Assembly (NCBI RefSeq): GCF_016432865.1
Contig: NC_067401.1
Coordinates: 196,478,001-196,542,000 of the forward strand
DNA length: 64,000 bases
DNA from: Antechinus flavipes
Lineage: Eukaryota
Direction: 5' to 3'
The notes below the pieces were generated by a model. The model was given only the letters and a program-made list of their open reading frames with translations, was not told the DNA's origin and did no database searches. Positions 3,909-61,721 of the stretch are shown here, piece by piece. The translations under genes and the position numbers were made by a program. Positions within the stretch are counted from its first letter, which is position 1; each line of letters starts with the position of its first letter.

Positions 3909-4133
3909 NNNNNNNNNNNNNNNNNNNNNNNNNNNNNNNNNNNNNNNNNNNNNNNNNNNNNNNNNNNNNNNNNNNNNNNNNNNNNNNNNNNNNNNNNNNN
4001 NNNNNNNNNNNNNNNNNNNNNNNNNNNNNNNNNNNNNNNNNNNNNNNNNNNNNNNNNNNNNNNNNNNNNNNNNNNNNNNNNNNNNNNNNNNNNNNNNNNN
4101 NNNNNNNNNNNNNNNNNNNNNNNNNNNNNNNNN
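3909..4133. other. Assembly gap (225 N)
   Basis: Run of N. Confidence 1.
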
Positions 4134-4886: not shown

Positions 4887-7800
4887 ATGGAACCTTTGAA
4901 GCTCTCCTTTTTGTTGATGACTGTGGCGCTGCGGGAGATCAAGGCAGGTGAGTAAAGAATGTTGTTATCGTTCAGTCGTTGCAGTTGTGTCTGACTCTTC
5001 ATGACCCTATTTGGGTTTTTTGGGGGAAAAGATTCGGGAGTAGTTTGCCATTTCCTTCTCCAGCTCGTTTTACAGACGAATATGGTTAATAGTATTAAAC
5101 TGATGTTTGGTGACTGGGCAGATTGACCAGAGGCTGCTTCTTGTGGAAAAGGTTTTTTTCTCATTCCCATAACCCATAAAAATTTCCTAATCCTCAGGTT
5201 CGGTTTGTTCTAAGGGGGAGGGGGGACGGGGGGGGTGTGTGAAAGTGGGCGGAGAGTGAATTACTTAGTGGCTAAGTACCTAGCTGGTGTGTGTGTGTGT
5301 ATGTGTGTGTGTGTGTGTGCCTACATATGCTGTCTCTTAATTTGAGAATGTTTCGAACAAGTATTTGAAGTAGAGATGAAGGCTTGAGGAAGTTGGGGAC
5401 AAAGCTAGCTAGCAGAGTCGAGAAGGAGTCTGGTATGGAAAGGGGAATGGCAAGCCTACGAAGGAAAATCCCAAGAGATTGAGGGGCAGAGGTGGATGGG
5501 GGAAAGACTGGAGACAGGAGGACTGGGGGAAGGGTAGGATTAGGAGGATTGGGAAGAAGAGTACAGGAGAGGGATGAAAAAGATGGAATCATATTTGGGG
5601 GCTAAAAGAGGGGTTTACAGGAAACAGAAACTTTGGAACTCAGGGTACTTGTGAGTAGTTTTTAAAATTTAGATGCAGGGGCAGCTAGGGGGCGTAGTGG
5701 ATAGAGCACCAGTCCTGAAGTCAGGAGGATCTGAGTTCAAATCCAGTGTCAGGCACTTAACACTTCCTAGCTGTGTGAGCTTGGGCAAGTCACTTAACCT
5801 AATTGCCTCAGGGGAAAAAATCTGGACCATATAAGGGAGGAAGTAGGGTGTTCAAAAAAGGCAATGGCTTCAATCTGGTAGTGGGAGAAGTTTCAGGGGA
5901 GCCGAGAGAGATTGGATAGGGAAAGGTAGAAGAAATGAAGGAAAGAGGTGGGAGCGGTGGGGGCAGCTGCAAGGATTCTACGCTGGAATGAGTTTTTGGC
6001 CTTTGCTACTGCGGCCGGACCGGATCCCTGGGCCTGGGAGGACAATCATGGTCATTGTCTTTGTCCTTAGGAATTCACTCTCTGAGATACTTCCAAACTT
6101 CCATGTCTCAGCCCGGACTCACAAAGCCGAGGTTCATTTCCGTGGGCTATGTGGACGATGAGGCGTTCGTGCGCTTCGACAGCTACAGCGCAGGTCTGAG
6201 GGAGGAGCCTATGGTGATGTGGTTGGACAAGAGTAACCAGAATTACTGGGAGAGAAACTCACGTGTCATCCGGGAGACTGAGCTCACGTTCCAAGTGGGC
6301 CTGCAGAATCTGCAGAAGTATTACAATCAGAGCGAGGGAGGTGAGTGAGGCAGGGCGCGGGATCTCTGGTTATGGCCACCTTCAGACGGGGGAGATGGTG
6401 GGGCGGGTTGGAGATGGATCGCGAGGGGCATGCACACTCCTGAAGGCCACCTCTCAAATCAACCTCTTGGGAGTTGGGAGAGGATTGGGCCCGATTGCGT
6501 GTGTAAGCCGGACTGACAAATATTCTGGGTCTGGCCCAAAGTTCACACATATCAGCGCCTGGTCGGCTGCGAAGTGACTTACGACGGGATGTTCAAGAGG
6601 GGGTTTGAGCAATTCGCCTACAATGGGCACGACTATATATCTCTGGATCCGACAACTCTGAGTTGGACCGCGGCAGAGCCCATGGCTGTTAACTCCAAGC
6701 TCAAGTGGGAGGCGGAGCGCAGCATCGCCCAGAGACAGAAAGCGTATCTGGAGGATAAGTGCGTTTACTGGCTGCTCAAGTACCTGGAGTACGGGAAGGA
6801 GAAACTGCTCCGGGCAGGTACAGCTTGTTTGGGTTCTGGCTAAGCCTATCCTCTACCTCTTACATCCCCTAGAGATGGAGGGGGGGGGAGGTTGGAGCCT
6901 GAATTCTTCTTGAAGGCCTCTTGTAGGAGGGATGGAGATTGGGATGAATCATAGAGTGCGTGAGCCCGATGTTTGCTTGCCCCACGAGTCTGTGAGAACT
7001 TTAACTCTATTCTTTAGGTCATTCTATGGGACTTGGAATCTGTAGAATTGAAGAAGTTGGAGATGAAAGCCGTATCTATAGAAATAATAAATCACTCCAG
7101 CCTCAATTTAGATTGTTTGAGGCTTGGCTTAGGGTGCAAGGAAGAAGTTCCAGAAGAACTGCTGCCTCAGGGAGAGAAATAATTTCCCGACAAGGAAGAA
7201 TTTGGCCCCTTCATTACAATTTCAATCTAGGTTGAGGTGGACAGCCCAACTTGACTTCAGCTCTTATCCTGTATGTCTCTGTCTCATTATTTCTCTTCTC
7301 TCCCTCCCCCTAAAATTTCTGAATCAGGAATTCTACACCTTCTTGGTCCCAACTTGTATATAAACAAAGGAGGCGTGGAATCAGGCATCCCTCTCTCTGA
7401 AATGGGACCAACTACAATTTTTTATTTCCCTCACAGCTTCAGGAGCTTTGTGTTCTTCTTCAAATGTACAGTATAATTTTTGTTATCCTATAGTAGATCC
7501 TAGCCTTTGAAGAAGGGTGTCCTTGTAACCTTTCCTCTAATCTTTCTTCTGTAGCTCCTCCCTCTGTTCGAATTACCCATCATACCCATCCTGATGGTAA
7601 GGTGACCCTGCAGTGCCGGGCCCAGGACTTTTACCCCGCGGAGATCTCTCTGACCTGGCTGAGAGATGGGGAAGAACAGCACCAGGACACAGAGTTCATC
7701 GAGACCAGGCCTGCTGGAGATGGGACCTTCCAGAAGTGGGCAGCTGTGGGGGTGACCTCGGGCCAGGAAGGGAGATATACCTGCCAAGTTCTGCACAAGG

Positions 7801-9104
7801 GGCTGCCTGAGCCCCTCACCCTGAAATGGGGTAAGGACTGTGAGGAGGGGCTGGGGGGTGGCCATTCCCACCTCCCAGAAGGAGCAGAGGGAGGGGGAAC
7901 TGCAGGGGGAGTTAGGGAAGGGTCAGTGAATCTCAGGCCAGAGAGGGATCCCGGCCTTTCAGCTCCCTTTTCCATTTCAGAGCCAGAGTCCTCATCGCCC
8001 TGGATCATTGTGGGGGTCCTTGCTGTTGTCGTCCTCCTCATTTCGATCATTGCTGGTTTTATAATCTGGAGGAGGAAGAAGACTTCAAGTGTGCAGGACT
8101 GGAAGGGGGTCATTAGGCGCAGGCACTATGGAGATTCAGGTTTCCCTGACCTCTCATCTTGTCTTTCTCTCCCCAAGTTCTCTATTTCCTATCTAAGGGA
8201 CTGTTAGCTATATGCTAAGACTCTAGATAAATAGACCTGTAAAGATCCCTTGTAGTGCTATAATAATATTACTGCTAAATATAAATATATTATATTATAT
8301 ACAATTTGTTTATATATATAAATATAAAATATATGGCTGGCTGAGTGGGGAAACCTCTTCAGAATCAGATAAGAAATGAACAGGGGGATTTCTGCTAAAG
8401 AAACTGGGTGTCTCCCCATTCAGGGTTGTAAATCAGAATAGGATATTGTTGATACAGGCCTGAAGGTTGGAAAGTGTCCCATTTGTAGTGCCTTTTTTCT
8501 CTCTTCCTCTTGACTCTAGATATTGGCTTGAAGTGGGGTGGGGTGGAGGAGCAGTGTCAATTGTAATTTGTTGTGTCTACAAGACAAATCACAGAACTTC
8601 TGAAACTTTCTAGAGATTCTCCTTGACTTCCCCATGGAAATTTTTTTCTTTTCCAAGTGGAAAAGGAGGGGACTATGTTCATACCGCTGGTAAGTGAAGG
8701 CTTGACATTTGATGGTAGAAAAAGGGGCCAGTCCATAATATCTTTGGGATATGAGAAATGAGAAGTTAGAAGCTTTCTTAGTAGTCATTCCTCAGTGTCC
8801 CTTTGCCTTCATATCCCCTGGTTCTAGAATATATGTCCCTGAGTGGGTTGTTTCTCTCTTTTGTCTTCAGGCAATGACAGTGCACAGGTGTCAGATGAGT
8901 CAGATATCTTTTTCACAGCCAAAGGTAAAACTCTGGGGCTGGTGTAAAGGGGAAAAATAAAAAGAAAGATATGTGAGTGGTTGGGGTGAGGATGCTTGTT
9001 TCCTCCAATGGGTGGTGAGGCAGCCTTTTCGGGATGAGGAGAGATTTGAGGCCAGAGATGACTTTGAGTATCTCCCTTAATCTGTCTGTCTTTCTTTAGC
9101 CTGA
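4887..9104 (+). CDS. MHC class I heavy chain (alpha chain), probably a non-classical marsupial UK-like locus
   Basis: Exons: leader 4887-4947 ([20 protein letters not shown]), alpha1 6071-6340, alpha2 6542-6817, alpha3 7555-7830, TM 7981-8088, exon 6 8657-8689 (acceptor is AA, not AG), exon 7 8871-8924, exon 8 9100-9104 (stop TGA). Exon sizes 270/276/276 and phase-1 junctions are canonical. Both Cys pairs, the N86 glycan site (NQS), Y7, Y59, Y84, Y123, K146, W147, Y159, W167 and Y171 are present; T143 is S. Length is 349 aa without exon 6. The UK assignment is recollection, not a database match. Confidence 0.95.
5287..5319. repeat. (GT)n microsatellite in class I intron 1
   Basis: About 16 GT units with one AT interruption. 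Confidence 0.95.
5678..5820 (+). mobile_element. tRNA-derived marsupial SINE (WSINE1-like) in class I intron 1
   Basis: GGGGCAGCTAGG start, A-box and B-box-like motifs (GTGGATAGAGC, GAGTTCAAATCC) and an A-rich end. A related copy is at 57859-58020 (-). Confidence 0.8.
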
Positions 9105-9399
9105 GAGAATTGCCATGTGTGGACCTGAGAAAGAAAACAAGGATATTCAAGTCTCTAATTCCTGTCTTGTTCCTGTGTTCTTTGACTTCTCTTCCCAGCA
9201 TTAGCTTTTGAGATCATCACTGAACTCTACTGGTTAAACCCCAGGGAAGCATCTATAATGCCCTCATCCTATTATCTATCTATTATTATCCTGTCTCACT
9301 TTGCAGAGGCCAGAGGGCTTTGTAAATGACCCCTCCTTAACATTTGATGTTTCACTGAACTCTGATATTTTTCTTCTTGCAAAAATTGGTATAATGAAT

Positions 9400-9525
9400 A
9401 CATTCTTTCTTCAGCTTGAGAAAACTTGGTTATGGACAACTGAGAAAAAACTAAAAATATATAAACCTTTAATTCCTGTCTTATTTGAGTTGACCCCTGG
9501 CTTTTCTTCCCAGCATTGGCTCAGG
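9400..9525 (+). repeat. Diverged tandem duplicate of class I terminal exon 8 and proximal 3'UTR
   Basis: ttcttcag|CTTGAG...TAATTCCTGTCTT...TCTTCCCAGCATTGGCT mirrors ttctttag|CCTGAG...TAATTCCTGTCTT...TCTTCCCAGCATTAGCT at about 9090-9205. It keeps an AG acceptor (9413-9414) and an in-phase TGA (9417-9419). Confidence 0.7.
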
Positions 9526-9529
9526 CTGG

Positions 9530-9637
9530 CACTTGAAGTCTTATTCCTCCAGATTATAAGACCAGCAATGACCGAAGTGAGGAGAAGGACAGCAGCAAGG
9601 AACCCCACAATGATCCAGGGGGATGAGGATTCTGGTT
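9530..9637 (-). repeat. Inverted copy of class I exon 5 (transmembrane exon)
   Basis: The reverse complement aligns to 7981-8091 with 11 substitutions and one 3-nt gap (about 90%). It translates as [35 protein letters not shown]. Confidence 0.95.
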
Positions 9638-9738
9638 CTAAAAGCTTTAATTAAAAAAAAAAAAACATGAAGGAGGAGAAAGAACTGAGACAGAAAAAAT
9701 GAGGGGGGGAAAATATATAGGAATTAACTCAAACTAGT

Positions 9739-10800
9739 ATGAATTCAAGCCATTCTCCAATTGATAAGTGGTCAAAGGATATGAACAGACAATTTTCAGA
9801 TGAAGAAATTGAAACGATTTCTAGTCATATGAAAAGATCTTCTAAATCACTATTGATCAGAGAAATGCAAATTAAGACAACTCTGAGGCATACAGCTCTC
9901 ATATTGGCTAAAAGGAGGGAAAAGATGATGATGAGTGTTGAAGGGAATGTGGGAAGACTGGGACACTAATACATTGTTGGTGGAACCATGATTGGATCCA
10001 ACCATTCTGGAGAGCAATCTGGAATTATGCCCCAAAAGTTATCAAACTGTGCATATCCTTTGATCCAGCAGTGCTACTACTGGGCTTAAATCCCAAAGAG
10101 ATCTTTAAGGAGAGAAAGGGACCCATATGTGCAAAAATGTTTGTGGCAGCCCTCTTTGTAGTGGCCAGAAACTGGAAACTGAATGGATGCCCATCAATTG
10201 GAGAATGGCTGAATAAGTTGTGGTATATGATTGTTATGGAATATTATTGTACTATGAGAAATAACCAACAGGATGATTTCGGAAAGGCCTAGATTGATAT
10301 TGGACAGTTCATTAAATGAACTGATGTTAAGTGAAATGAGCAGAACCAGGAGATCATTATATACGGCAACAACAAGATTATATGATGATTAATTCTTTTT
10401 AAAAAAAATTTTAAATTATAACTTTTTATTGACAGAACCCATGCCTGGGTAATTTTTTACAACATTATCCCTTGCACTCACTTCTGTTCCGACTTTTCCC
10501 GTCCCTCCCTCCACCCCCTCCCCTAAATGGCAGGAAGTCTTATACATGTTAAATATGTCATAGTATATATGATGATTAATTCTGATGGACATGACTCTCT
10601 TGAACAATGAGATGATTCAAACCAGTTCCAATTGTTCAGTTATGAAGAGAGCCATCTACACCCAGAGAGAGAACTGTGGGAACTGAGTGTGGGTGGTCCA
10701 CAACATAGCATTTTCACTCTTTTTGTTGTTGTTTGCTTGCATTGTATTTTGCTTCTCCTTTTTTTTTTTTTTAAACTGGTTTGATTCGATTTTTCTTGTG
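9739..10800 (+). mobile_element. 5'-truncated LINE-1 (ORF2 C-terminus and 3'UTR)
   Basis: Translations IDKWSKDMNRQFS...SLLIREMQIKTTLR and CAKMFVAALFVVARNWK...CPSIGEWLNKLW match the L1 ORF2 C-terminal domain. Confidence 0.9.
10397..10565 (-). mobile_element. Short younger L1 3' fragment nested in the older L1
   Basis: T-rich start on the + strand. An 18-bp target-site duplication TATATGATGATTAATTCT is at 10379-10396 and 10566-10583. Same family as the copy starting near 12552. Confidence 0.8.
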
Positions 10801-12551
10801 TGGCACGATAATTGTATAAAACAAGGCTAATGTTGAAGAATTATCCACGTATATGTTTTGAAAAAATAAAAAGTTTTAATTAAAAAAAACTTTAAAAAAT
10901 GAGGGGGAAAATAAATTGGAAAAAACATTAGCAGCAACCCAAAAAGCCAGATATTTCTGAAGACATAATAAAAATTATTATAGAAAGTTATGCAACAAAT
11001 TTGTTGTTGTTGTTTAGTCATGTCCATGTCCCATTTTCTGTTTTCTTGGGAAAGATACTGAAATAGTTTGCCATTTCCTTCTCTAACTCATTTTTCAGAT
11101 GAGAAACCAAGGCAAGCAGAATCAAGTAATTTGTACAGGATCACATAGCTCAGAAGAGTCCAAAACCACATTCCTGACTCCAGGTCTGCCACTTTATCCA
11201 CTTTGTCACCTGACTACCTTATGGGAAAGATAGAATTAGATTTAAAAAAGGAGAATAAAAGGAAATTTGTGAGGTGGGGGAGGTAGGAGTAAGTTGGACT
11301 AAATGACTATTAAAGTGACCTCTAACTCTAATTTTGTGATTAATTCTTCTAATAAGATATTGAGTACTACTAACACCTGAAAAATGTCTTGAAATAAACT
11401 AAGAAATTTAGGGGAAACTGTTCAGCTAAGTGTCAAAGTATCTAGGTACCAGGCCTGGAGTCAGGAAGATTCATCTTCCTGAGTTCAAATCTGACCACAG
11501 ACACTAGCTGTGTGTCATGAATTGTGTTTGTCAAACACAATTTAAAAACAATGACAAATGCTTGTCTTAAGCAAGCAGATTCATATGTTTTTGTTGTTCA
11601 GTTGTGGCACCATCCACCGCCCCACTTAACCCCCTGATGTATGCTTTGGGTCCAAGACTATTTCTCCCCCTCCTTCCCTCTTCTGTTTGAATGACTGAGG
11701 AGAGAAAATGGCATGTTCACTTGTAGACATGGATGCTGATGTTTGGGACTGATAATTCAGAATATAGACTTAAAATTCTTAGGTATCCACTCCAGTTCCT
11801 ATCTGAACAGCAATCCCTTCTACATCTTAACCAAGACTCATCTAGTCTCTACTCGCTATTACAAGTTGATCTATGGATTTTTTCATCCCTGAGATGCCTT
11901 TAATTCTCTGTAGGGAAAATTTATTCCTAATTTCTAAGAAGAAGAAAGGGTCACACAGGAGCAGGAGAAATGGGAAGATGATGGGAGGGAGGGAAACTCA
12001 AGTGCTACAAACAGTGAAACTCCATTCTTTGAATAAGAACAGGAAGAAGAAAGATCTGTGAAGCTGGGGATTTCCTTTGTGTCAGTTTCAATTTTGGTCT
12101 TCTAACCCGTGTGTGTTCATTCTGCCCATTTACCAATTGCTTTTTTTGGTCTTATATTAACTATTGGATGGCAGAGCCTGTGAAGCTAATCAGAAGTTAA
12201 GCATTCATCCATTAACCCAGAGTAAATTGATTTTAGCCACCTTGTGCTTCTGCTTTTTGACTATGGGACCTGATATGCTTTCTTTTATTGGGGACTCTGG
12301 CCCTGATAAAGATCTGGGTGGGAAAGTAGAGAATGGTATTAAATGGTCACCTAGAGATTGGATAGAAATTCTAGGGGATAGATATGTAGCTGAGAAAGAC
12401 CTCTACCAATAGCTACCCCAGCACCACATCAGAGTTACTTTCCAGCAAACACCTTAATCTCAAGTAAAGTGAAACCCAGAAGGTTTGGTTGGCAAGTAGG
12501 GTAATCAGGGGACAGAGCATTGGACAAGTCACTTACGTCTGTTTGTCTCAA

Positions 12552-13020
12552 ATTTTTTTTAAAATAACTTTTTATTGATAGAACCCATGCCAGGATAATT
12601 TTTTACAGCATTATACCTTGCACTCACTTCTGTTCTGATTTTTCCCCTCCCTCCCTCCACCCCCTCCCCCAGATGGCAAGCAGTCCTTTACATGTTGAAT
12701 AGGTTACAGTATATCCTAGATATAATTTATGTGTGCAGAACCGAACAATTTTCTTGTTGCACAGGGAGAATTGGATTCAGAAGGTATAAATAATCTGGGA
12801 AGAAAAACAAAAATGCAAGCAGTTTATATTCATCTCCCAGTGTTCTTTCTTTGAGTGTAGCTGGTTCTGTCCATCCTTGATCACTTGAAACTGAATTAGC
12901 TCTGTTTATCGAAGTGATCCACTTCCATTAGAATACATCCTCAAACAGTATCGTTATTGAGGTATATAATGATCTCCTGGTTCTGCTCATTTCACTTAGC
13001 ATCAGTTCATGTAAGTCTCG
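12552..13020 (-). mobile_element. L1 3' fragment
   Basis: Same 3' end as 10397-10565, extended further into L1 3'UTR-type sequence shared with 15739-16734. Confidence 0.75.
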
Positions 13021-13847
13021 TCATTGACTCAGTTTTCTAATCTGTAAAAATGAACTGGAGAAGCAAATGACAAACCACTCCATTATCTTTGCCAAAAAAA
13101 TCCCAGATGGGGTCATGAAATGGGGTCAGACAGATCTGAAAAAACAACTGAACCAGAAAAGGTAGTGGTGAGAAGAAGCAATGAATGTGTGTGAGCCTGT
13201 ATATGGGAGACTTGGAGGCCAGTAGCCTAGCATCCTTAGCTTAAGTTTGGCAGGACAGTGGGAGTTTTGGGGTAGTTCTTTTGGTTTGGGAAGGGTGAGT
13301 AAGTTGATAGGTGGTATGAGGACAAGGAGCATTGAGGGTGCCAGGAAGGATAAAAATCTCCAACAGTACTGGGGGCCTTAAGAAGAGAGCAGATCCGCCT
13401 AGGAGCCCCAGAATCTAAGGGCAGTACTGAGAATCAGGAACAACTTTCTTAAAGAGCTTCACAAGGGAGCATGGGGAGTGGCTGGGATGAGGCCGGGGGC
13501 TAGGTGAGGACAAAGGGTAGGGGGCTGATAGTGGGGAGTGTGAGAGACCTGGGGCTCCCACCAGAGTGGGGAGGGACCGAGCTTCTAGAGGCAAGAGCAC
13601 TAGGACATGCCCTGATTGTCAGTAAAGCTCATCTCAGAGAGATATAGTCAGGAGAATTGCTATGGTCTAGGGCTATGCACCAACAGTATTGGGGTGTAGG
13701 GGCTGGAATGCCCTGCATGGGAAGGCATGGAGCCAGGAGTGGGGCAGGAAACGGGGTTCAGGGATCACACCCCAGAGGCCTGGTTTGCTCTGAGAAGTCT
13801 TGGTTTTGGCTGTAGACACAGAACTCTCGTCACTCCCCATGTCTCAG

Positions 13848-13998
13848 GTTCTCTATTCATAAGGTATTTTTCCACTTTGGCTTCCCACCCAGAGCTCAGG
13901 GAGCCACAATTTTTCTCTGTGGTAGCCCACAAGTAGAGGATCCGCAGTTACTACAACTTCAACAGTGGCAGCACAAGTCAAGATGGAATCTTGGGTAC
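13848..13998 (+). pseudogene. Degenerate MHC class I exon 2 (alpha-1) relic
   Basis: After the acceptor gtctcag it reads GSLFIRYFSTLASHPELREPQFFSV (class I consensus GSHSLRYFxTAVSRPGLGEPRFISV). A stop follows at 13934-13936, then frameshifted VEDPQLL/FNSGSTS (consensus VDDxQFVRFDSDSAS). An L1 fragment interrupts it. Confidence 0.75.
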
Positions 13999-13999
13999 T

Positions 14000-14470
14000 G
14001 TAAATGGACAAAGTGGATTGAAACTACTGGAAACAGGAAATGTGGAAGTCCAAAATGAAAGGAAAAATTTGGGAAAAATTGAGACACACAAGAAAATCTT
14101 GAAAAGAGGATTAATGGGAAAGAAGGGACAAAATTTTTATGGTAGCATTTGTTTAAAGTGAAAAAGAATTGGAAGTTAGGAGAATGCCCATGAACTGAGG
14201 AATCTCTGAACAAGTTGTGGTACTGACTGTGATTGAATTCTATTGTTTTATAAGATAATGACAAACAAGGTCGTCTCAGGAAAACCTGAAGACTTATGTG
14301 AACTGATGCAAAATGAAGTGAGCAGATCCAGAAGACTGTGAACACATTGTATGATGAATAATTTAGCTATTCTCAGGAATATAGTGATCCAAGAGAATCT
14401 GAAGATCTATAATGAAAAACACCACCTACATCCAGAGAAAGAACTGATAGAATATAGACTGATGTATACT
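14000..14470 (+). mobile_element. Old L1 3' fragment interrupting the class I relic
   Basis: Similar to the L1 ORF2 end and 3'UTR at 10180-10700 (aattggaag...gaatgccca...gaactgatg...gaagtgagcaga). Confidence 0.65.
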
Positions 14471-15738
14471 TTTCGGTAAAACTGACCATGGAGAGAGATA
14501 CTGGGGAGTAGGAGGAGCTCCATCCTCTGGGTCCTTGATAAGTCCAGAACTGCTCCTTCCCCAGTTCTTGAATGGTGGCAGTGAATACAGATTATTGGCA
14601 ACCACCCTAACTTCTTCCTGCTCATCTTCCATAAGCCCTTAATCCATGGGGAAAGTCCCCCAGTCTCCAAGCACAAGTTCTGTAGAAAATGTCATGTATA
14701 GGAGCATCATTAGACTAGGGAACTTCTCCCATCTGCTTCTTCCCCCTCCTCTCCCCCCTTAGCTGTCTGTTCCCCTGGGGAGCAGTCAGTATGATTACTG
14801 ATGACTTTCAGACAGATCCTCTCCCCCAGCTCCACTGCAAAATCTAATTCACTCAGGACACACTTATTGCAGACTCAGTTCTCCTCTGTTCATATAGAAT
14901 TACTCTCCAGAGATAGTTTCCATTACTCCAATCCTGGCCTTGCCTCTCAGTGGCAGGATTCTCGGTGGCAATTACAATCCCAAGAAGAGCAAACATGAAA
15001 CGAATTGGAAGCCTCTTCCCATAGAAACTAATGCCCACCCCATACTCATACTTCTTCTATATTCAGTGTGGTAGTGGCCAGAAAATTCACATGTCGCCTC
15101 CCAGCTCTCCAGTTCAGCCAGATCTCCTACTTTTGAACTACTTCTTCCCTCTTTGCTCCTGTCAGAAATACCCATTTTCATTGTTGTGCATATTTCTTGG
15201 GTCTGGAAAAGTGCCCATCATTTTGACATCCTCCAGTCCCCAAGAATGGTTCCTTGAATCTACTTTGGGATGAGGGGGGCCTGAAGTCCAGACCCGGCAG
15301 CCCTCTCTGCCTCCTTCTCCAATCCCTGATTCCTGCTCATTTCCAATAGGAGGGACCCAGTCCTCAGGTGGTCAGTTGGGTTTAGAGCTTGATTTGCCTC
15401 ATGGTTGGTGAAGTTTAAAAATCTGTGAATGGGAAGATAGTGGGGCCCAGAGAGATAGTCGAGAATCAAAGAAACACAGGAAAAAGAACTCAGGCTGGCT
15501 CTGGATTCCTGTCCTATGTTCAGGCTTCAGTGTGCTTCCAGTGCTTGGTTCTTTTGGCTTATGGATCAAAGGAAGCAGCTCAACTTTCTGTTTCTTTTTC
15601 CCAGAAATATCTTCATTTCTTGCTAATAGAGCAGGCTGCCCTGCTCTTTGCTTCGCTCTTTGCAATGGCTGTCCACCAGATGGGGACAAATTCCAGGCTC
15701 TTGCTTGGGATTCAGGAAATGCCAACTCCAGGACACAT

Positions 15739-16205
15739 TTTTTTTTTAATTAAAGCTTTTTATTTACAAAACACATGCATGGATAATTTTTCCAACATTG
15801 ACCCTTGCAAAGCCGTGTGTTCCAAATTTTCCCCTCTTTCCCTCCACCCCCTTCCCTAGCTGGCAGGTAGTCCAGTACATGCAATATATGTATACATATT
15901 TATACAGTTAGCTTGTTGCACAAGAAAAATCAGATCAAAAAGGAAGAAAAATAAAAATTGAGAAAACAAAATGCAAGTAAATAACAGAGAGAGAGAATGC
16001 AATGTTGTGTTCCAACTCAATTCTCACAGTTCTCTCTGGGCGTAGATGGCTCTCTTCATCACTGAGCAAATAGAACTAGTTTGAATCATTTCACTTTTGA
16101 AGAGAGCCACGTCCATCAGAATTAATTGTCGTATAGTCTTGTGGTTGCCATGTATAATGATCTCCTGGTTCTGTTTAATTCACTTGGCATCAGTTCATGG
16201 AGGTC
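15739..16205 (-). mobile_element. L1 3' fragment, insertion 1 at a reused target site
   Basis: Poly-T start on the + strand. Flanked by TCCAGGACACAT at 15727-15738 and 16206-16217. Confidence 0.8.
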
Positions 16206-40500: not shown

Positions 40501-42488
40501 AAAAAAGAGAAAGCTCATGGTAGGAGGGCTAGAGAAGTAGTGAAGACACATAGCTTTTATACAAGAAATTATATCACAAGTAAGAGAGCATTGAGAAGGG
40601 GAAGGGGAGGCATCTAATTGGTTGTTGCTATCCAGAGAGATTAGAATGGAAGGTTTCTGTTTCCCTGAAATCTCCTGATTTCTAGGAAACAGAAAATCCG
40701 GCCTTCAGGCTTAATCAAGCAGACAGTGGTCCAGCTAATAGACTAAATATCGATAAATGTCAAATACCAATAAATGTCATCAGCTCAGGTTACATAAATA
40801 TATTTATAGCTGGCCAAGGCTCAAAATATGAGCCTGTGTTATATTATGCAGGTCATAGAGGAAACACAGAAATAATGAAAATAAAATATAGAAAAAGAAT
40901 TCATACATTCCTGTAAGTTCTTCACCTTATCTCTCTATTCCACACAATAACAACCTTCAGGTTGCTTAGAGACCAAATGAAATAGTAATGATAAAGGGCT
41001 TAGCATAGTGCCTGGCACCTAGAAAGTGCCATATAAATGTTGGCTATTATTATTTAAGTGCTAACAATGTGACAAGTGCTGTTGTAAATTCTAGGCACAC
41101 AAATACCCATAAAAGTTCCTGCCCTCAAGTAGCTTACATTTTTGTAAGGCAGAGAATATNNNNNNNNNNNNNNNNNNNNNNNNNNNNNNNNNNNNNNNNN
41201 NNNNNNNNNNNNNNNNNNNNNNNNNNNNNNNNNNNNNNNNNNNNNNNNNNNNNNNNNNNNNNNNNNNNNNNNNNNNNNNNNNNNNNNNNNNNNNNNNNNN
41301 NNNNNNNNNNNNNNNNNNNNNNNNNAATCTGTAGAATCACATCCATAGAGTAGTCTGATGACCCTTTTCAAAAGCATTGGGATTATCGATAGGGTGACTG
41401 TGTCCCAAGCAAGAGGTGGAGATCGCAGGCAAGTGCACACCTGCAGAGGCAGGGCCCAGGGCAAGATGTCCTCATGGATGACTGGAAGGGATATGGAACA
41501 TGGTTTGGGGCTGACTAGACATAGGGCTAGGTGAGTTTGCTCCCACTCCTTCAGACTCCTGTTTTTCAGGGCAGGACTTCCAAGGATGGGGGGAGTAAGA
41601 CCTTTGATCTCCATGAACTCTCCCAGAAAACCATCTCACTCCTGTGTGAGGGACTGGTCTCAGCTCCCTCCGTCCCTTTTAGTCCATGGAAATAGCATGT
41701 TTTTGGTGGCTGTGATGGTTCTGCTCTCCATGCATCTGTTCTCTCTCCAGAGACTGGGGAGTCTGGGAGCCAGCTGTCAGGGGGTCAGCGGCAGGCTGTG
41801 GCCCTGGCTCGGGCTCTGATCCGGAACCCCCGGGTCCTGATCTTAGATGATGCCACCAGTGCCCTGGACACAGACAACCAGTTATGGGTGAGACAGCAAC
41901 TTCTCCTACTCCCTCAGTCCCAAATCCTTAAAGCCGAAGGCAATCCCAGCTCCTTCCTGCTGTGCCCAGAGAGTTTTCTGTTTAAGAAAGCTTATAATGT
42001 GCAAATCTTCCAGATAAAATCCTTCTATTTAACTTCTTTTCCTTTTTTCCTTCATCATCATCATCACTATTAGCACGACCAAAAAACCTTGATTAAACAC
42101 AGAACTGTGCCCAGGGATGTGCTGGGGTTTTTTCTCTCCTTACAGCCAGTTCTATGGGATGGAAGGGCAGTCAGGAGTCACTGCGGATGAGACAGTTAAT
42201 CAGTGGCCTAATGCTATGATTTGTGCATGAGCTTTCTGAACTACTAACAGCACCTGTGCCTTCTTCCCACAGGTGGAGCATCTCCTGTACGAGGCCCCCA
42301 GGAAGCTCCCTCAGGCCGTGCTCCTCATCACCCAGCGCCTCAGCTCTGTGCAAAGGGCTGACCAGATTCTCTTCCTGGAAGAGGGGGTCATTCAGGAGAG
42401 CGGCACCCATAGACAGCTCATGGAGCAACGGGGCCGATATTGGACCATGGTGGAGGGCACAGGCGGGAGCTTAGCTCCTCAGGAATGA
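31503..42488 (+). CDS. TAP1: Antigen peptide transporter 1 (ABCB2)
   Basis: Eleven exons: 31503-32076, 32569-32683, 32843-32973, 36241-36446, 37615-37812, 38389-38517, 38657-38845, 39363-39536, 39763-39925, 41751-41887, 42273-42488 (2232 nt, 743 aa). Walker A GPNGAGKS, signature LSGGQ, TAP1-type degenerate Walker B (ILDDAT) and switch (ITQ). All junctions are GT-AG and in phase. Confidence 0.98.
40387..40944 (-). mobile_element. Solo LTR, copy 2, in TAP1 intron 9
   Basis: TG...CA termini with a short inverted repeat (TGTGAGGAA / TTCCACA) and a 6-bp TSD with one mismatch (TAATAA / CAATAA). Inserted in a SINE. Homologous to 4134-4701. Confidence 0.85.
41160..41325. other. Assembly gap (166 N) in TAP1 intron 9
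   Basis: Run of N. Confidence 1.
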
Positions 42489-60000: not shown

Positions 60001-61721
60001 ATTCTAGTGTAGATGTGTGGGGACATGATGAGCAATGAGCAGCAGAGAAAATTTTCAGACACCTGGACCGTGAGCCACAGTTACCTCCTCCTGGGACCCT
60101 GGCCCCTCCTTCTCTTCAGGGCCTTGTGGAATTCCAAGATGTTTCCTTTGCTTATCCCACCCACCCAACCAAGCCTGTCCTCCAGGTGTGTGAAATTGGG
60201 AGGAAACCCAGAATCCAGTTTTGTAGCCCTCAGCTTGCTTCTGTGTGACAGGCGTGGTGGGGCTGAACCTGGTTTTTAATCTTGATTTTCCTGAGTTACC
60301 AGGTGGTGATTGCCTCATGATGAGGAAGGAAATCTTCCTCCATTATTCTAACTGATTATTGTCTCCTTTCCCCTTCTCCTTCAGGGAGTGACATTTACTT
60401 TACACTCTGGGAAGGTGACAGCCTTAGTAGGGCCCAATGGAGCTGGGAAGAGCGCAGTGGCTGCATTGCTACAGAACCTGTATCAGTCCACAGGCTGCTG
60501 GGGGGAACCCTTGTTCCAGTACCAGTGCTAGCATCTGCATTCACAGGGAGCAGGGATAAGGAGGAAAGGGAGATGAAGCTGAGGAAGGAAACACTGGGAG
60601 AAGTAGGTGGGCAGGACTGGGGAAGAGAAAAAGAGATTTCTTCTCATGAAGACCTGTGGGAAGGGCTTCTTGGGTCCCTGCCCTGGGTTGCCTCACCTGG
60701 TGCTCCCTTCCCACACAGGTGTCGGTGGTAGGTCAGGAGCCTGTGCTGTTCTCAGGGTCTGTGAGAGACAACATCACCTGTGGGCTGGACAGCTGTGGGG
60801 ATGATGCGGTGAGGGCCGCTGCCCGCGCAGCCCGTGCTGATGGATTCATCGCCAGTGTGGAACATGGACTGGACACAGGAACCTTCACCGATCTACATGA
60901 CCGGGACAATGAGTTTGTAAATGAAAGGGAATGTGACCAATCTGTGATGAGGTCATCAGGTACCCCTGGGTACACTAACTCTAAAGCTGGTATTCCCCAT
61001 GTTTCCTTCTTCCCTCCACCTTATTTCTATGAAAGTATTTGCGTGTGCTCCCCAGGCTTTTTGCCCAGGAGACCCTGTGATATGTCACCTCTCCCTGGAT
61101 GGCACCATTGTGCACACATCCCCAGGACTCTCTCAGTCTGATCTGAGGGGAAATGGCAGAGGAAAGACTGGGGACAAAAGAGTCTTTCCCTTGCACAGAA
61201 TAGTCACAGGACCCTGTCTCTGAGGAAGGCTATATTCTCTGCCTCTACAGCTGTGGGGGAAAGGGAAGCCGGGTGTCTGCAGGACAGAAGCAATGTCTGG
61301 CCATTGCTCTGATCCTTGTGAGGAATCCCCGTGTCCTCATCCTGGCCACCAGTGCCCAGGACATGGACTGTGAGCAGGAGGAAAGGGCGAGGGGCTGGGC
61401 AGAAGGCACATGGGGATCCCCTACCCACTGAGGGGCTACATTTCCTTTATTATCTTAGGTGCAGTAAGCAGGGCTGGGGCAGGCTGCAGGTTTGTGAGTT
61501 TGTTTCTCTAATGGCCACTTTTCTCACCCTCAGCTTCAGGAGAAGATGCTGCAGGAGGTCGGACAGTGCTGGTGATTGCACATCGGCTGCAGACGGTGCA
61601 GGCTGCTGACCACATCCTGGTGCTGGAGCAAGGGGAGGCGCTGGAGCAGGGGACCCACACTGGGCTCATGGCTCAGAGAGGTCTCTGTCATCGCCTGGGG
61701 CAACGACACCTTGAAGCCTGA
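60001..61721 (+). pseudogene. TAP2: TAP2 pseudogene, exons 8-12 only (end of TM region and NBD)
   Basis: Exon 8, 60001-60185: [26 protein letters not shown], with TAG at 60010 and a 4-bp deletion. Exon 9, 60385-60546: Walker A, deletions and an in-frame TAG. Exon 10, 60719-60878: VGQEPVLFSGSVRDNI. Exon 11, 61251-61380: SAGQKQ, a 1-bp deletion, and the Walker B DE codons deleted. Exon 12, 61534-61721: [12 protein letters not shown] with a frameshift. These motifs are TAP2-type, not TAP1-type. Confidence 0.93.

What the first reader, a model, noticed from the sequence alone, without database searches (positions are those of the whole stretch)
7981..9655. Class I gene carries an antisense copy of its own transmembrane exon in its probable 3'UTR
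Seen: 9530-9637 is an inverted copy of exon 5 (7981-8091), about 90% identical. Between the stop codon (9104) and 9650 there is no AATAAA or ATTAAA, only minor variants (AATACA, ACTAAA, TATAAA). The first canonical signal is ATTAAA at 9650-9655, just downstream of the inverted copy. Inference: the transcript could fold back into a duplex of about 100 bp that covers the TM exon and its donor. Established: long intramolecular duplexes can cause exon skipping, attract ADAR editing or nuclear retention, or feed Dicer. Skipping the 108-nt exon 5 is in frame and would give a secreted class I molecule, so this could be a built-in membrane/soluble switch or an auto-silencing element. I do not recall this being described for an MHC gene.
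Basis: partly seen in the sequence, partly recalled or inferred. Interest (0 to 1): 0.75.

Follow-up and report, generated by a model that had tools for sequence, protein, structure and literature searches.

The report
L1-linked inverted exon copy behind UK gene
Just behind a marsupial non-classical MHC class I gene (UK, yellow-footed antechinus) lies a real, old, backwards copy of the gene's own membrane-anchor exon; it is joined directly to the tail of a LINE-1 jumping element, so it looks like a by-product of a LINE-1 insertion, not an evolved switch, though it could pair with the real exon in RNA.

Summary
7975-8091 and 9530-9643 are inverted copies (87% over 117 nt, E 4e-35), and no AATAAA or ATTAAA lies between the stop codon and 9650.

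The gene is the Antechinus flavipes orthologue of the devil class Ib gene Saha-UK. It sits between a class I relic and PSMB9/TAP1/PSMB8.

- The inverted copy is one part of a 260-nt composite: a direct copy of the exon 8 region (9404-9521), 8 nt, the inverted exon 5, then 9640-9664.
- 9640-9664 is the 3' terminus of a LINE-1 plus A13. The same 19-mer ends two genuine L1s in the window.
- The "canonical ATTAAA" is therefore an L1 end fused to its poly(A) tail. Its downstream context is poor (U 0.07).

The differences between the arms look neutral, and the copy keeps ancestral states shared with devil UK.

If both arms are transcribed together, a 106-bp duplex (-195 kcal/mol) dominates the predicted fold. 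It covers the exon 5 acceptor and the canonical donor.

Best reading: a relic of an L1-associated templated insertion. A splicing or editing role is possible but unsupported.

The parts
4887..4947 (+). UK gene exon 1 (leader, [20 protein letters not shown])
   Evidence: identical to the start of P0003
6071..6340 (+). exon 2 (alpha1)
   Evidence: translation equals P0003 residues 22-110
6542..6817 (+). exon 3 (alpha2)
   Evidence: 100% to P0003 residues 112-202
7555..7830 (+). exon 4 (alpha3).
7981..8139 (+). exon 5 as used in the NCBI model (TM plus extended tail). The canonical exon 5 is 7981-8088 (108 nt) with donor CAA|GTGTGC
7975..8091 (+). arm 1 of the inverted repeat: the acceptor AG, all of canonical exon 5 and the canonical donor
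8657..8689 (+). exon 6 relic ([10 protein letters not shown]). The ancestral acceptor AG is now AA (8655-8656); the next AG shifts the frame by 1. The NCBI model skips this exon
8871..8924 (+). exon 7
9100..9403 (+). exon 8 (Ala, then stop TGA at 9102-9104) and the undisturbed part of the 3'UTR
9393..9402 (+). weak poly(A) hexamers AATGAA/AATACA just before the insertion point, with a U/GU-rich downstream context
9404..9521 (+). direct copy of 9089-9206 (exon 8 acceptor, Ala-stop, first 100 nt of the 3'UTR): 72.6% identity with gaps, 17% substitutions
   Evidence: (score 108 against shuffles 33 +/- 6)
9522..9529 (.). 8-nt junction between the direct and the inverted piece
9530..9643 (-). inverted copy of exon 5 (arm 2). 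Open frame on the minus strand: [35 protein letters not shown]
9640..9664 (+). LINE-1 3' terminus (AAAAGCTTTAATT) plus an A13 tail. It overlaps the inverted copy by 3-4 A (microhomology)
   Evidence: the same 19-mer ends the L1s at 10869-10887 (+) and 15742-15760 (-); 0 expected by chance
9650..9655 (+). ATTAAA, the first canonical poly(A) hexamer, made of L1 terminal AATT plus tail As. Downstream U is 0.07
9665..11010 (+). nested LINE-1 fragments (ORF2 C-terminus at 9739-10289; 3' end at 10869-10899)

Best explanation
The inverted exon 5 copy is a real and old piece of DNA. It belongs to a roughly 260-nt composite insertion (9404-9664) in or just behind the 3'UTR of the Antechinus flavipes UK gene. 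UK is a non-classical MHC class I gene, the orthologue of devil Saha-UK.

The composite reads, in order:
- a direct copy of the exon 8 region;
- 8 nt;
- the inverted copy of exon 5;
- a 3-4-nt A microhomology;
- the last 13 nt of a LINE-1;
- a 13-A tail.

The most likely origin (inferred) is an abortive LINE-1 target-primed reverse transcription or break repair at an A/T-rich site next to the gene's poly(A) signal. Only the L1 tail was copied. The gap was then filled with two short patches templated on the local UK gene or its nascent pre-mRNA, one direct and one inverted (twin priming or template switching).

Since then the patches have drifted neutrally for roughly 10^7 years or more. The rate behind that figure is general knowledge, not calibrated here.

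The complementarity to exon 5 is therefore an accident of origin. It can form a very stable 106-bp duplex only in those transcripts that read past the weak upstream poly(A) hexamers. There it would hide the exon 5 acceptor and canonical donor. That is a side effect that may exist, not a designed membrane/soluble switch.
For: Shown:
- Inverted repeat.
- Direct repeat 9089-9206 against 9404-9521: score 108 against shuffles 33 +/- 6.
- L1 terminus: 9640-9658 is identical to the 19-mer that ends two L1 3' ends in the window, with 0 matches in 100 shuffles. Those ends follow an L1 ORF2 C-terminus (PDB 8sxt, E 1e-12 to 1e-13).
- Adjacency: with about 2 other L1 ends in 64 kb, one lying within a few nt of the repeat border by chance has odds of about 2e-4 (my arithmetic).
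- Neutral pattern: 8 transitions (5 G:U, 3 A:C in the sense RNA), 4 transversions, 3 synonymous to 8 non-synonymous.
- Age: the copy has 35 codons like devil Saha-UK (Antechinus has an extra Arg) and shares A16 and V23 with devil. The living exon therefore changed after the copy was made.
- One event is possible: the substitution divergence of the two patches does not differ significantly (10.5% and 17.1%, Fisher p 0.18).
- No other class I fragments lie in 9665-16000 that would suggest a larger inverted gene duplication.

Literature:
- L1 chimeras with antisense mRNA pieces are ascribed to twin priming (PMC13174262).
Against: - No convincing target-site duplication flanks 9404-9664. The best candidate is ATGAA, 5 nt.
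- The order of the patches (direct, then inverted, then L1 tail) is not what simple twin priming plus one template switch predicts.
- The L1 tail and A13 show no decay over 32 nt, while the exon copy is 10% diverged. This fits a younger L1 tail that merely landed beside, or truncated, an older inverted copy.
- The neutral pattern rests on only 12 differences.
- Absence of function is not shown. The NCBI model uses a donor (8139|8140) that lies just outside the duplex, which is what occlusion of the canonical donor would predict. However, Sminthopsis UK models read through that donor too.
- No RNA or orthologue data were available.
Confidence: 0.6

Rival explanations
1. Functional long-range RNA duplex. 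The copy is transcribed with the gene and pairs with exon 5. It then regulates exon 5 skipping (giving soluble UK) or donor choice, or it marks the RNA for ADAR editing, nuclear retention or dicing.
For: - The duplex is 106 bp at -194.7 kcal/mol and dominates the minimum-energy fold of 7900-9700. It covers the acceptor AG and the canonical donor.
- No strong poly(A) hexamer lies before 9650.
- The NCBI model uses a donor outside the duplex.
- Skipping is in frame.
- Exon skipping linked to RNA duplexes between inverted repeats is documented (PMC13019944, PMC8052449, abstracts only).
Against: - There is no transcript evidence at all.
- ATTAAA at 9650 is an accidental L1 end with a poor downstream element. 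Weaker hexamers with a good context lie before the copy.
- G:U-preserving changes show no excess (5 to 3), and the substitution pattern is neutral.
- An origin as an L1 by-product explains the copy's presence without any function.
- Sminthopsis also reads through the canonical donor. The broken exon 6 acceptor is another candidate reason for the rewired tail.
Confidence: 0.12
2. Remnant of a larger, older inverted or rearranged class I gene duplicate, for example a partner of the decayed class I relic at 12.2-14.1 kb. Only the exon 8-like and exon 5-like pieces survive. The L1 tail landed next to it later, or deleted the rest.
For: - The region is a class I duplication zone: a leader-like exon and a decayed exon 2 lie downstream.
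- The L1 tail looks younger than the exon copy (0 of 32 against 12 of 114 differences).
- The copy's C-terminal half (LLLT.VI.GLIIWR.KTS) resembles the TM of another A. flavipes class I protein, P0165.
Against: - No further class I homology lies on either strand in 9665-16000 at permissive settings.
- Two patches of about 115 nt sit 8 nt apart in opposite orientations, which is not a gene-like arrangement.
- The exact abutment with an L1 terminus through an A microhomology would have to be coincidence (about 2e-4).
Confidence: 0.2
3. Assembly artefact: a local mis-join or a collapsed or duplicated read.
For: The window contains two N gaps (3909-4133 and 41160-41325), so the assembly is not gapless.
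Against: - The copy differs from exon 5 at 12 positions plus a 3-nt indel, and it carries ancestral states.
- It lies far from the gaps.
- Eight public runs from three organism labels hold 56-86% of the sampled words of 6060-9660, although those words could not be localised.
Confidence: 0.02
4. Exon of an antisense (minus-strand) transcript. On the minus strand the copy keeps an open frame, a T13-rich polypyrimidine tract with TTTTAG, and a GT donor.
For: Sequence read; minus-strand ORF 9411-9608.
Against: - No minus-strand class I exons lie nearby.
- The ORFs across the module have no relatives in the protein collection.
- The polypyrimidine tract is simply the L1 poly(A) tail read backwards.
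Confidence: 0.03

Closest known systems
LINE-1 chimeric and complex insertions (template switching, twin priming, templated patches at L1 integration sites)
   Same: - A 5'-truncated L1 3' end with a poly(A) tail is joined through microhomology to short copies of cellular sequence.
- Antisense-oriented mRNA pieces next to L1 are known and ascribed to twin priming (PMC13174262).
- Duplications, inversions and templated insertions at L1 sites are documented (PMC11702581).
   Different: - The L1 part is only 13 nt.
- Both patches come from the very gene that was hit (0.2 and 1.4 kb upstream), and they include splice-site bases, so the template was DNA or unspliced RNA.
- No clear target-site duplication.
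- The patch order does not fit the simple models.
Inverted-repeat Alu pairs and other long-range RNA duplexes that cause exon skipping, circular RNAs, ADAR editing or nuclear retention
   Same: Two roughly 100-nt complementary arms lie within one transcription unit, 1.4 kb apart. The predicted duplex is very stable and spans splice sites.
   Different: - One arm is a coding exon of the gene itself, not a second transposon copy.
- Whether both arms are ever on one RNA is unknown.
- No conservation, editing or skipping data.
Soluble MHC class I made by skipping the TM exon (HLA-A/-B exon 5 skipping, PMC2188102)
   Same: Exon 5 encodes the membrane anchor and its length is a multiple of 3, so skipping would give a secreted heavy chain.
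   Different: In HLA the skipping depends on splice-site and allele features, not on an inverted exon copy. No skipped UK isoform was seen here.
Marsupial UK class Ib genes (Saha-UK, Maeu-UK, Modo-UK)
   Same: - 90% identity to Saha-UK over residues 1-205.
- Same neighbours (PSMB9, TAP1, PSMB8) as in the devil BAC (PMC3414760).
   Different: The Antechinus gene has a broken exon 6 acceptor and an extended exon 5 in the NCBI model. The open papers read here do not mention an inverted exon copy, but they were only searched for a few terms.

Membership tests
Marsupial UK (non-classical MHC class I) orthologue | Closest relative is Saha-UK, not the classical or other class Ib genes | tested here: met
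   P0151 (AIS75088.1, which PMC8953681 calls Saha-UK) is 90% identical over residues 1-205. The next dasyurid paralogues are at or below 60%.
Marsupial UK (non-classical MHC class I) orthologue | Position in the antigen-processing cluster next to PSMB9, TAP1 and PSMB8 | tested here: met
   PSMB9-like ORF on the minus strand at 27.7 kb; TAP1-like ORFs at 31.4-42 kb; PSMB8-like ORFs at about 50 kb (recognised by eye, Pfam gave nothing). The order matches devil BAC FQ482140.
LINE-1 chimeric / TPRT-associated insertion | 3' part is an L1 3' end followed by a poly(A) tail | tested here: met
   9640-9664 is AAAAGCTTTAATT plus A13, identical to the ends of two L1s in the window. L1 identity of those elements.
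LINE-1 chimeric / TPRT-associated insertion | Target-site duplication and a TT/AAAA endonuclease site flanking the whole insertion | tested here: inconclusive
   Only a 5-nt ATGAA is shared by the two flanks (9394-9398 and 9666-9670). Later L1s nested into the tail blur the 3' flank.
LINE-1 chimeric / TPRT-associated insertion | 5' part is a copy of a cellular RNA, in sense (template switch) or antisense (twin priming) | tested here: inconclusive
   Both orientations are present. The patches include intron bases (AG of the acceptor, GTG of the donor, 11 nt of intron 7), so the template was pre-mRNA or DNA.
Functional long-range RNA duplex / 3'UTR inverted-repeat element | Both arms present on the same RNA | not testable with these tools
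The poly(A) context is ambiguous.
Functional long-range RNA duplex / 3'UTR inverted-repeat element | Thermodynamically stable duplex | tested here: met
   -194.7 kcal/mol, 106 pairs; 102 of 117 positions paired in the minimum-energy fold of 7900-9700.
Functional long-range RNA duplex / 3'UTR inverted-repeat element | Evolutionary maintenance of pairing (compensatory or G:U-biased changes, conservation in orthologues) | tested here: not met
   Within this one genome, 5 G:U against 3 A:C transitions plus 4 transversions: no bias.
Soluble class I by TM-exon skipping | In-frame TM exon and an observed exon 4-to-6/7 junction | tested here: inconclusive
   The frame condition is met (108 or 159 nt). 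No junction data were available. The only isoform I could read (P0003) keeps the TM exon.

The most novel reading that the evidence does not exclude
An accidental L1-templated inverted copy of the TM exon has been co-opted. In read-through transcripts it pairs with exon 5 of the conserved marsupial class Ib gene UK and masks its acceptor and canonical donor. This shifts splicing to the downstream donor or to exon 5 skipping (a secreted UK), or it makes the TM-coding exon an ADAR target. That would be a self-complementary exon/3'UTR switch in an MHC gene.
Probability: 0.1. Interest if true: 0.7.

Novelty: new member of a known kind. Interest (0 to 1): 0.35.

Why it matters
UK is one of the few class I genes kept as a clear orthologue across marsupials for about 80 million years, and its function is unknown (PMC2719672, PMC3414760).

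A natural 106-bp self-complementarity between its membrane-anchor exon and its 3' flank is a ready-made experiment on two questions. The first is whether long-range RNA pairing can change anchor-exon use or trigger editing in an MHC gene. The second is mechanistic: the locus is a clean example of an L1 event that copied two patches of the target gene itself, one of them inverted, and so created a potential hairpin in one step.

If, as seems more likely, the copy is inert, the practical lesson is for annotation. The only canonical poly(A) hexamer of this gene is an L1 tail. The true 3' end, and the rewired cytoplasmic tail, need cDNA evidence.

Tried and rejected
No depth, junction, 3'-end or editing data exist. 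Those places were not sent to any search tool afterwards. I worked beside them: queries stopped at 7715 or started at 7755, P0003 was searched only over residues 1-205, and P0003 was not sent whole to the listing of cluster members, so its sister isoforms were not read.
I could not fetch orthologous loci from devil, Sminthopsis or other marsupials.
- The 117-aa plus-strand ORF across all three junctions (9301-9651) was searched in the protein collection as a proxy for the module in other assemblies: no hits. This blank means little.
- A metagenome scan for the conserved 5' part of exon 5 found 0 loci.
- The search of earlier findings by sequence found nothing.
- Pfam on long ORFs and on the L1 ORFs was uninformative. 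The PDB sequence search identified L1 ORF2 instead.
- I first read the A13 run as a lysine-codon stretch of an L1 ORF2 fragment, and the 9694/10894 repeat as part of it. I dropped this when 9640-9658 matched true L1 3' termini exactly.
- I at first took the two patches to be of different age (87% against 72.6%). Counting substitutions only, they do not differ significantly.
- The spliced mRNA was not joined or folded.
Full report
**1. The observation**

The inverted repeat exists. The repeat finder reports arms 7975-8079 and 9539-9643, 105 nt and 88% complementary. blastn of the window against itself gives 7975-8091 against 9643-9530, 87.2% over 117 columns, E 4.5e-35, with no third copy in 64 kb. 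The alignment has 12 mismatches and one 3-nt gap.

Homology ends about 6 nt beyond the exon 5 acceptor (TTTCAG against TTTTAG) and 3-10 nt beyond the canonical donor (CAA|GTG).

The poly(A) statement is also right. Between the stop codon (9102-9104) and 9650 there are only variant hexamers, and ATTAAA at 9650 is the first canonical one. A copy with 12 substitutions and an indel is not an assembly duplicate.

**2. What the gene is**

Exon 3 translated by reference is 100% identical to P0003, an NCBI protein of Antechinus flavipes (366 aa, "class I histocompatibility antigen ... isoform X2") on a 486-Mb chromosome record.

The closest relative is P0151, which is AIS75088.1. It is 90% identical over residues 1-205. 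PMC8953681 names that accession Saha-UK. The next dasyurid paralogues are at or below 60%.

The neighbours fit the devil BAC map, PSMB8-TAP1-PSMB9-UK-TAP2 (PMC3414760). Downstream of the gene the window has:
- a decayed class I relic at 12.2-14.1 kb;
- a PSMB9-like ORF on the minus strand at 27.7 kb;
- TAP1-like ORFs at 31.4-42 kb;
- PSMB8-like ORFs near 50 kb (recognised by eye).

So this is the antechinus UK gene, a class Ib gene conserved across marsupials and of unknown function (PMC2719672).

Exons were checked one by one against P0003.

The NCBI model keeps the TM exon but extends it to a donor at 8139|8140. It skips exon 6, whose ancestral acceptor AG is now AA. Sminthopsis UK models also read through the canonical exon 5 donor ([11 protein letters not shown]). 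The devil cDNA uses the classical exons.

**3. What surrounds the inverted copy**

First, 9404-9521 is a direct copy of 9089-9206. That source segment holds the last 11 nt of intron 7, the Ala-stop of exon 8 and the first 100 nt of the 3'UTR. The local alignment scores 108 against 33 +/- 6 for shuffles. Only 8 nt separate this patch from the inverted exon 5.

Second, the 19-mer at 9640-9658 (AAAAGCTTTAATTAAAAAA) occurs three times in the window and 0 times in 100 shuffles. The other two occurrences are the ends of genuine LINE-1 3'UTRs that run into poly(A), at 10869-10887 (+) and 15742-15760 (-). The first of these follows an ORF2 C-terminus that matches human ORF2p residues 1065-1239 (E 1e-12 to 1e-13). 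So 9640-9664 is the last 13 nt of an L1 plus an A13 tail. It abuts the inverted exon copy through 3-4 shared As.

Third, it follows that the "canonical ATTAAA" is L1 terminal AATT plus tail As.

The whole 9404-9664 stretch is thus a composite: direct patch, junction, inverted patch, L1 tail, poly(A). It was inserted at 9403/9404, right after the weak hexamers AATGAA/AATACA.

With about two other L1 ends in 64 kb, an L1 end within a few bases of the repeat border by chance has odds of about 2e-4 (my arithmetic).

**4. Age and selection**

The copy still reads [35 protein letters not shown] on the minus strand. It has the UK-type PWIIVG start, and it has 35 codons like devil Saha-UK. The living antechinus exon has an extra Arg. 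The copy also agrees with devil at positions where the living exon differs (A16, V23). The living exon therefore changed after the copy was made, or the copy came from a slightly different template.

The differences are 8 transitions and 4 transversions. Of the transitions, 5 keep a G:U pair and 3 give A:C in the sense RNA. At codon level there are 3 synonymous and 8 non-synonymous changes. That is a neutral pattern, with no sign that pairing was protected, though the numbers are small.

Substitution divergence is 10.5% for the exon 5 pair and 17.1% for the exon 8 pair, which is not significantly different (Fisher p 0.18). One event is therefore possible. With a generic mammalian neutral rate (general knowledge, not calibrated here) this means tens of millions of years. 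The composite may then be shared with other dasyurids, a prediction I could not test.

One tension remains. The L1 tail and A13 show no decay over 32 nt, which would fit a younger L1 tail.

**5.

In silico the duplex is strong:
- cofold -194.7 kcal/mol;
- 106 intermolecular pairs;
- longest unbroken helix 27 bp;
- in the minimum-energy fold of 7900-9700, 102 of 117 arm positions pair with the copy.

The duplex covers the acceptor AG (7979-7980) and the canonical donor (8089-8090), but not the donor used by the NCBI model (8140).

Whether both arms are ever on one RNA is open. The stretch from 6 to 45 nt after ATTAAA 9650 has U 0.07 and A 0.60. The weak hexamers at 9393/9397 and 9450-9460 have U 0.28-0.47 and 5-6 GT/TG dinucleotides. 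Those weak sites would end the mRNA before 9530.

Read-through transcripts, or use of the duplicated exon 8 acceptor at 9414|9415 (which keeps the Ala-stop reading), would include the copy.

Exon skipping linked to inverted-repeat duplexes is well documented in primates (PMC13019944, PMC8052449, abstracts only). The mechanism is therefore plausible in kind.

**6. What I could not do**

- Proxy searches came back blank: the ORF across the junctions, a metagenome pattern and earlier notes by sequence.
- The look-up of sequencing runs showed that eight runs from three organism labels hold 56-86% of the sampled words of 6060-9660. This cannot be localised to the copy.

**7. Verdict**

The best explanation (0.6) is a relic of an L1-associated, locally templated insertion. 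L1 integration sites are known to carry inversions, duplications and templated insertions (PMC11702581). Antisense mRNA pieces joined to L1 are ascribed to twin priming (PMC13174262).

The exact order of steps is inferred, and it does not fit the simplest models. No clear target-site duplication was found.

A regulatory or editing role (about 0.1) is neither supported nor excluded.

As a kind of thing it is a new member of known classes: L1 chimeric or complex insertions, and intragenic inverted repeats. The unusual twist is that one arm is the gene's own TM-coding exon.

Noticed in passing
window 9404-9419: The duplicated exon 8 acceptor (TTCTTTCTTCAG|CT TGA) keeps the same Ala-stop reading as the real exon 8. 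It could serve as an alternative terminal exon whose 3'UTR would contain the inverted exon 5 copy 110 nt downstream.
   Followed up: partly
window 8081-8924: The exon 6 coding sequence is intact ([10 protein letters not shown]), but its acceptor AG is AA. The NCBI model P0003 skips it and uses a downstream exon 5 donor (8139|8140), giving the tail [17 protein letters not shown]. Sminthopsis UK models (P0269, P0270) read through the same donor, while the devil cDNA does not.
   Followed up: partly
window 12254-14040: A decayed class I relic lies on the plus strand. It has a leader-like ATG (MGPDMLSF..., resembling the alternative leaders of koala and wallaby UK-like models P0158 and P0272) and an exon 2 remnant with an in-frame stop.
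   Followed up: partly
window 9665-11010: Nested LINE-1 fragments lie here. The ORF2 C-terminus is at 9739-10289 and the 3' end at 10869-10899. The element is bracketed by a 30-nt direct repeat (9694-9723 and 10894-10921, 87%), and an older ORF2-like piece runs to about 11010.
   Followed up: partly
window 60656-61141: An ABC-transporter nucleotide-binding-domain-like ORF (VSVVGQEPVLFSGSVRDNITCGL) lies beyond PSMB8. It may be a TAP2-like exon in a position that differs from the devil BAC order.
   Followed up: no
window 4970-5079, 11025-11102, 13041-13153: Three copies of one SINE-like repeat (76-79% identity) lie in intron 1 and downstream of the gene.
   Followed up: no
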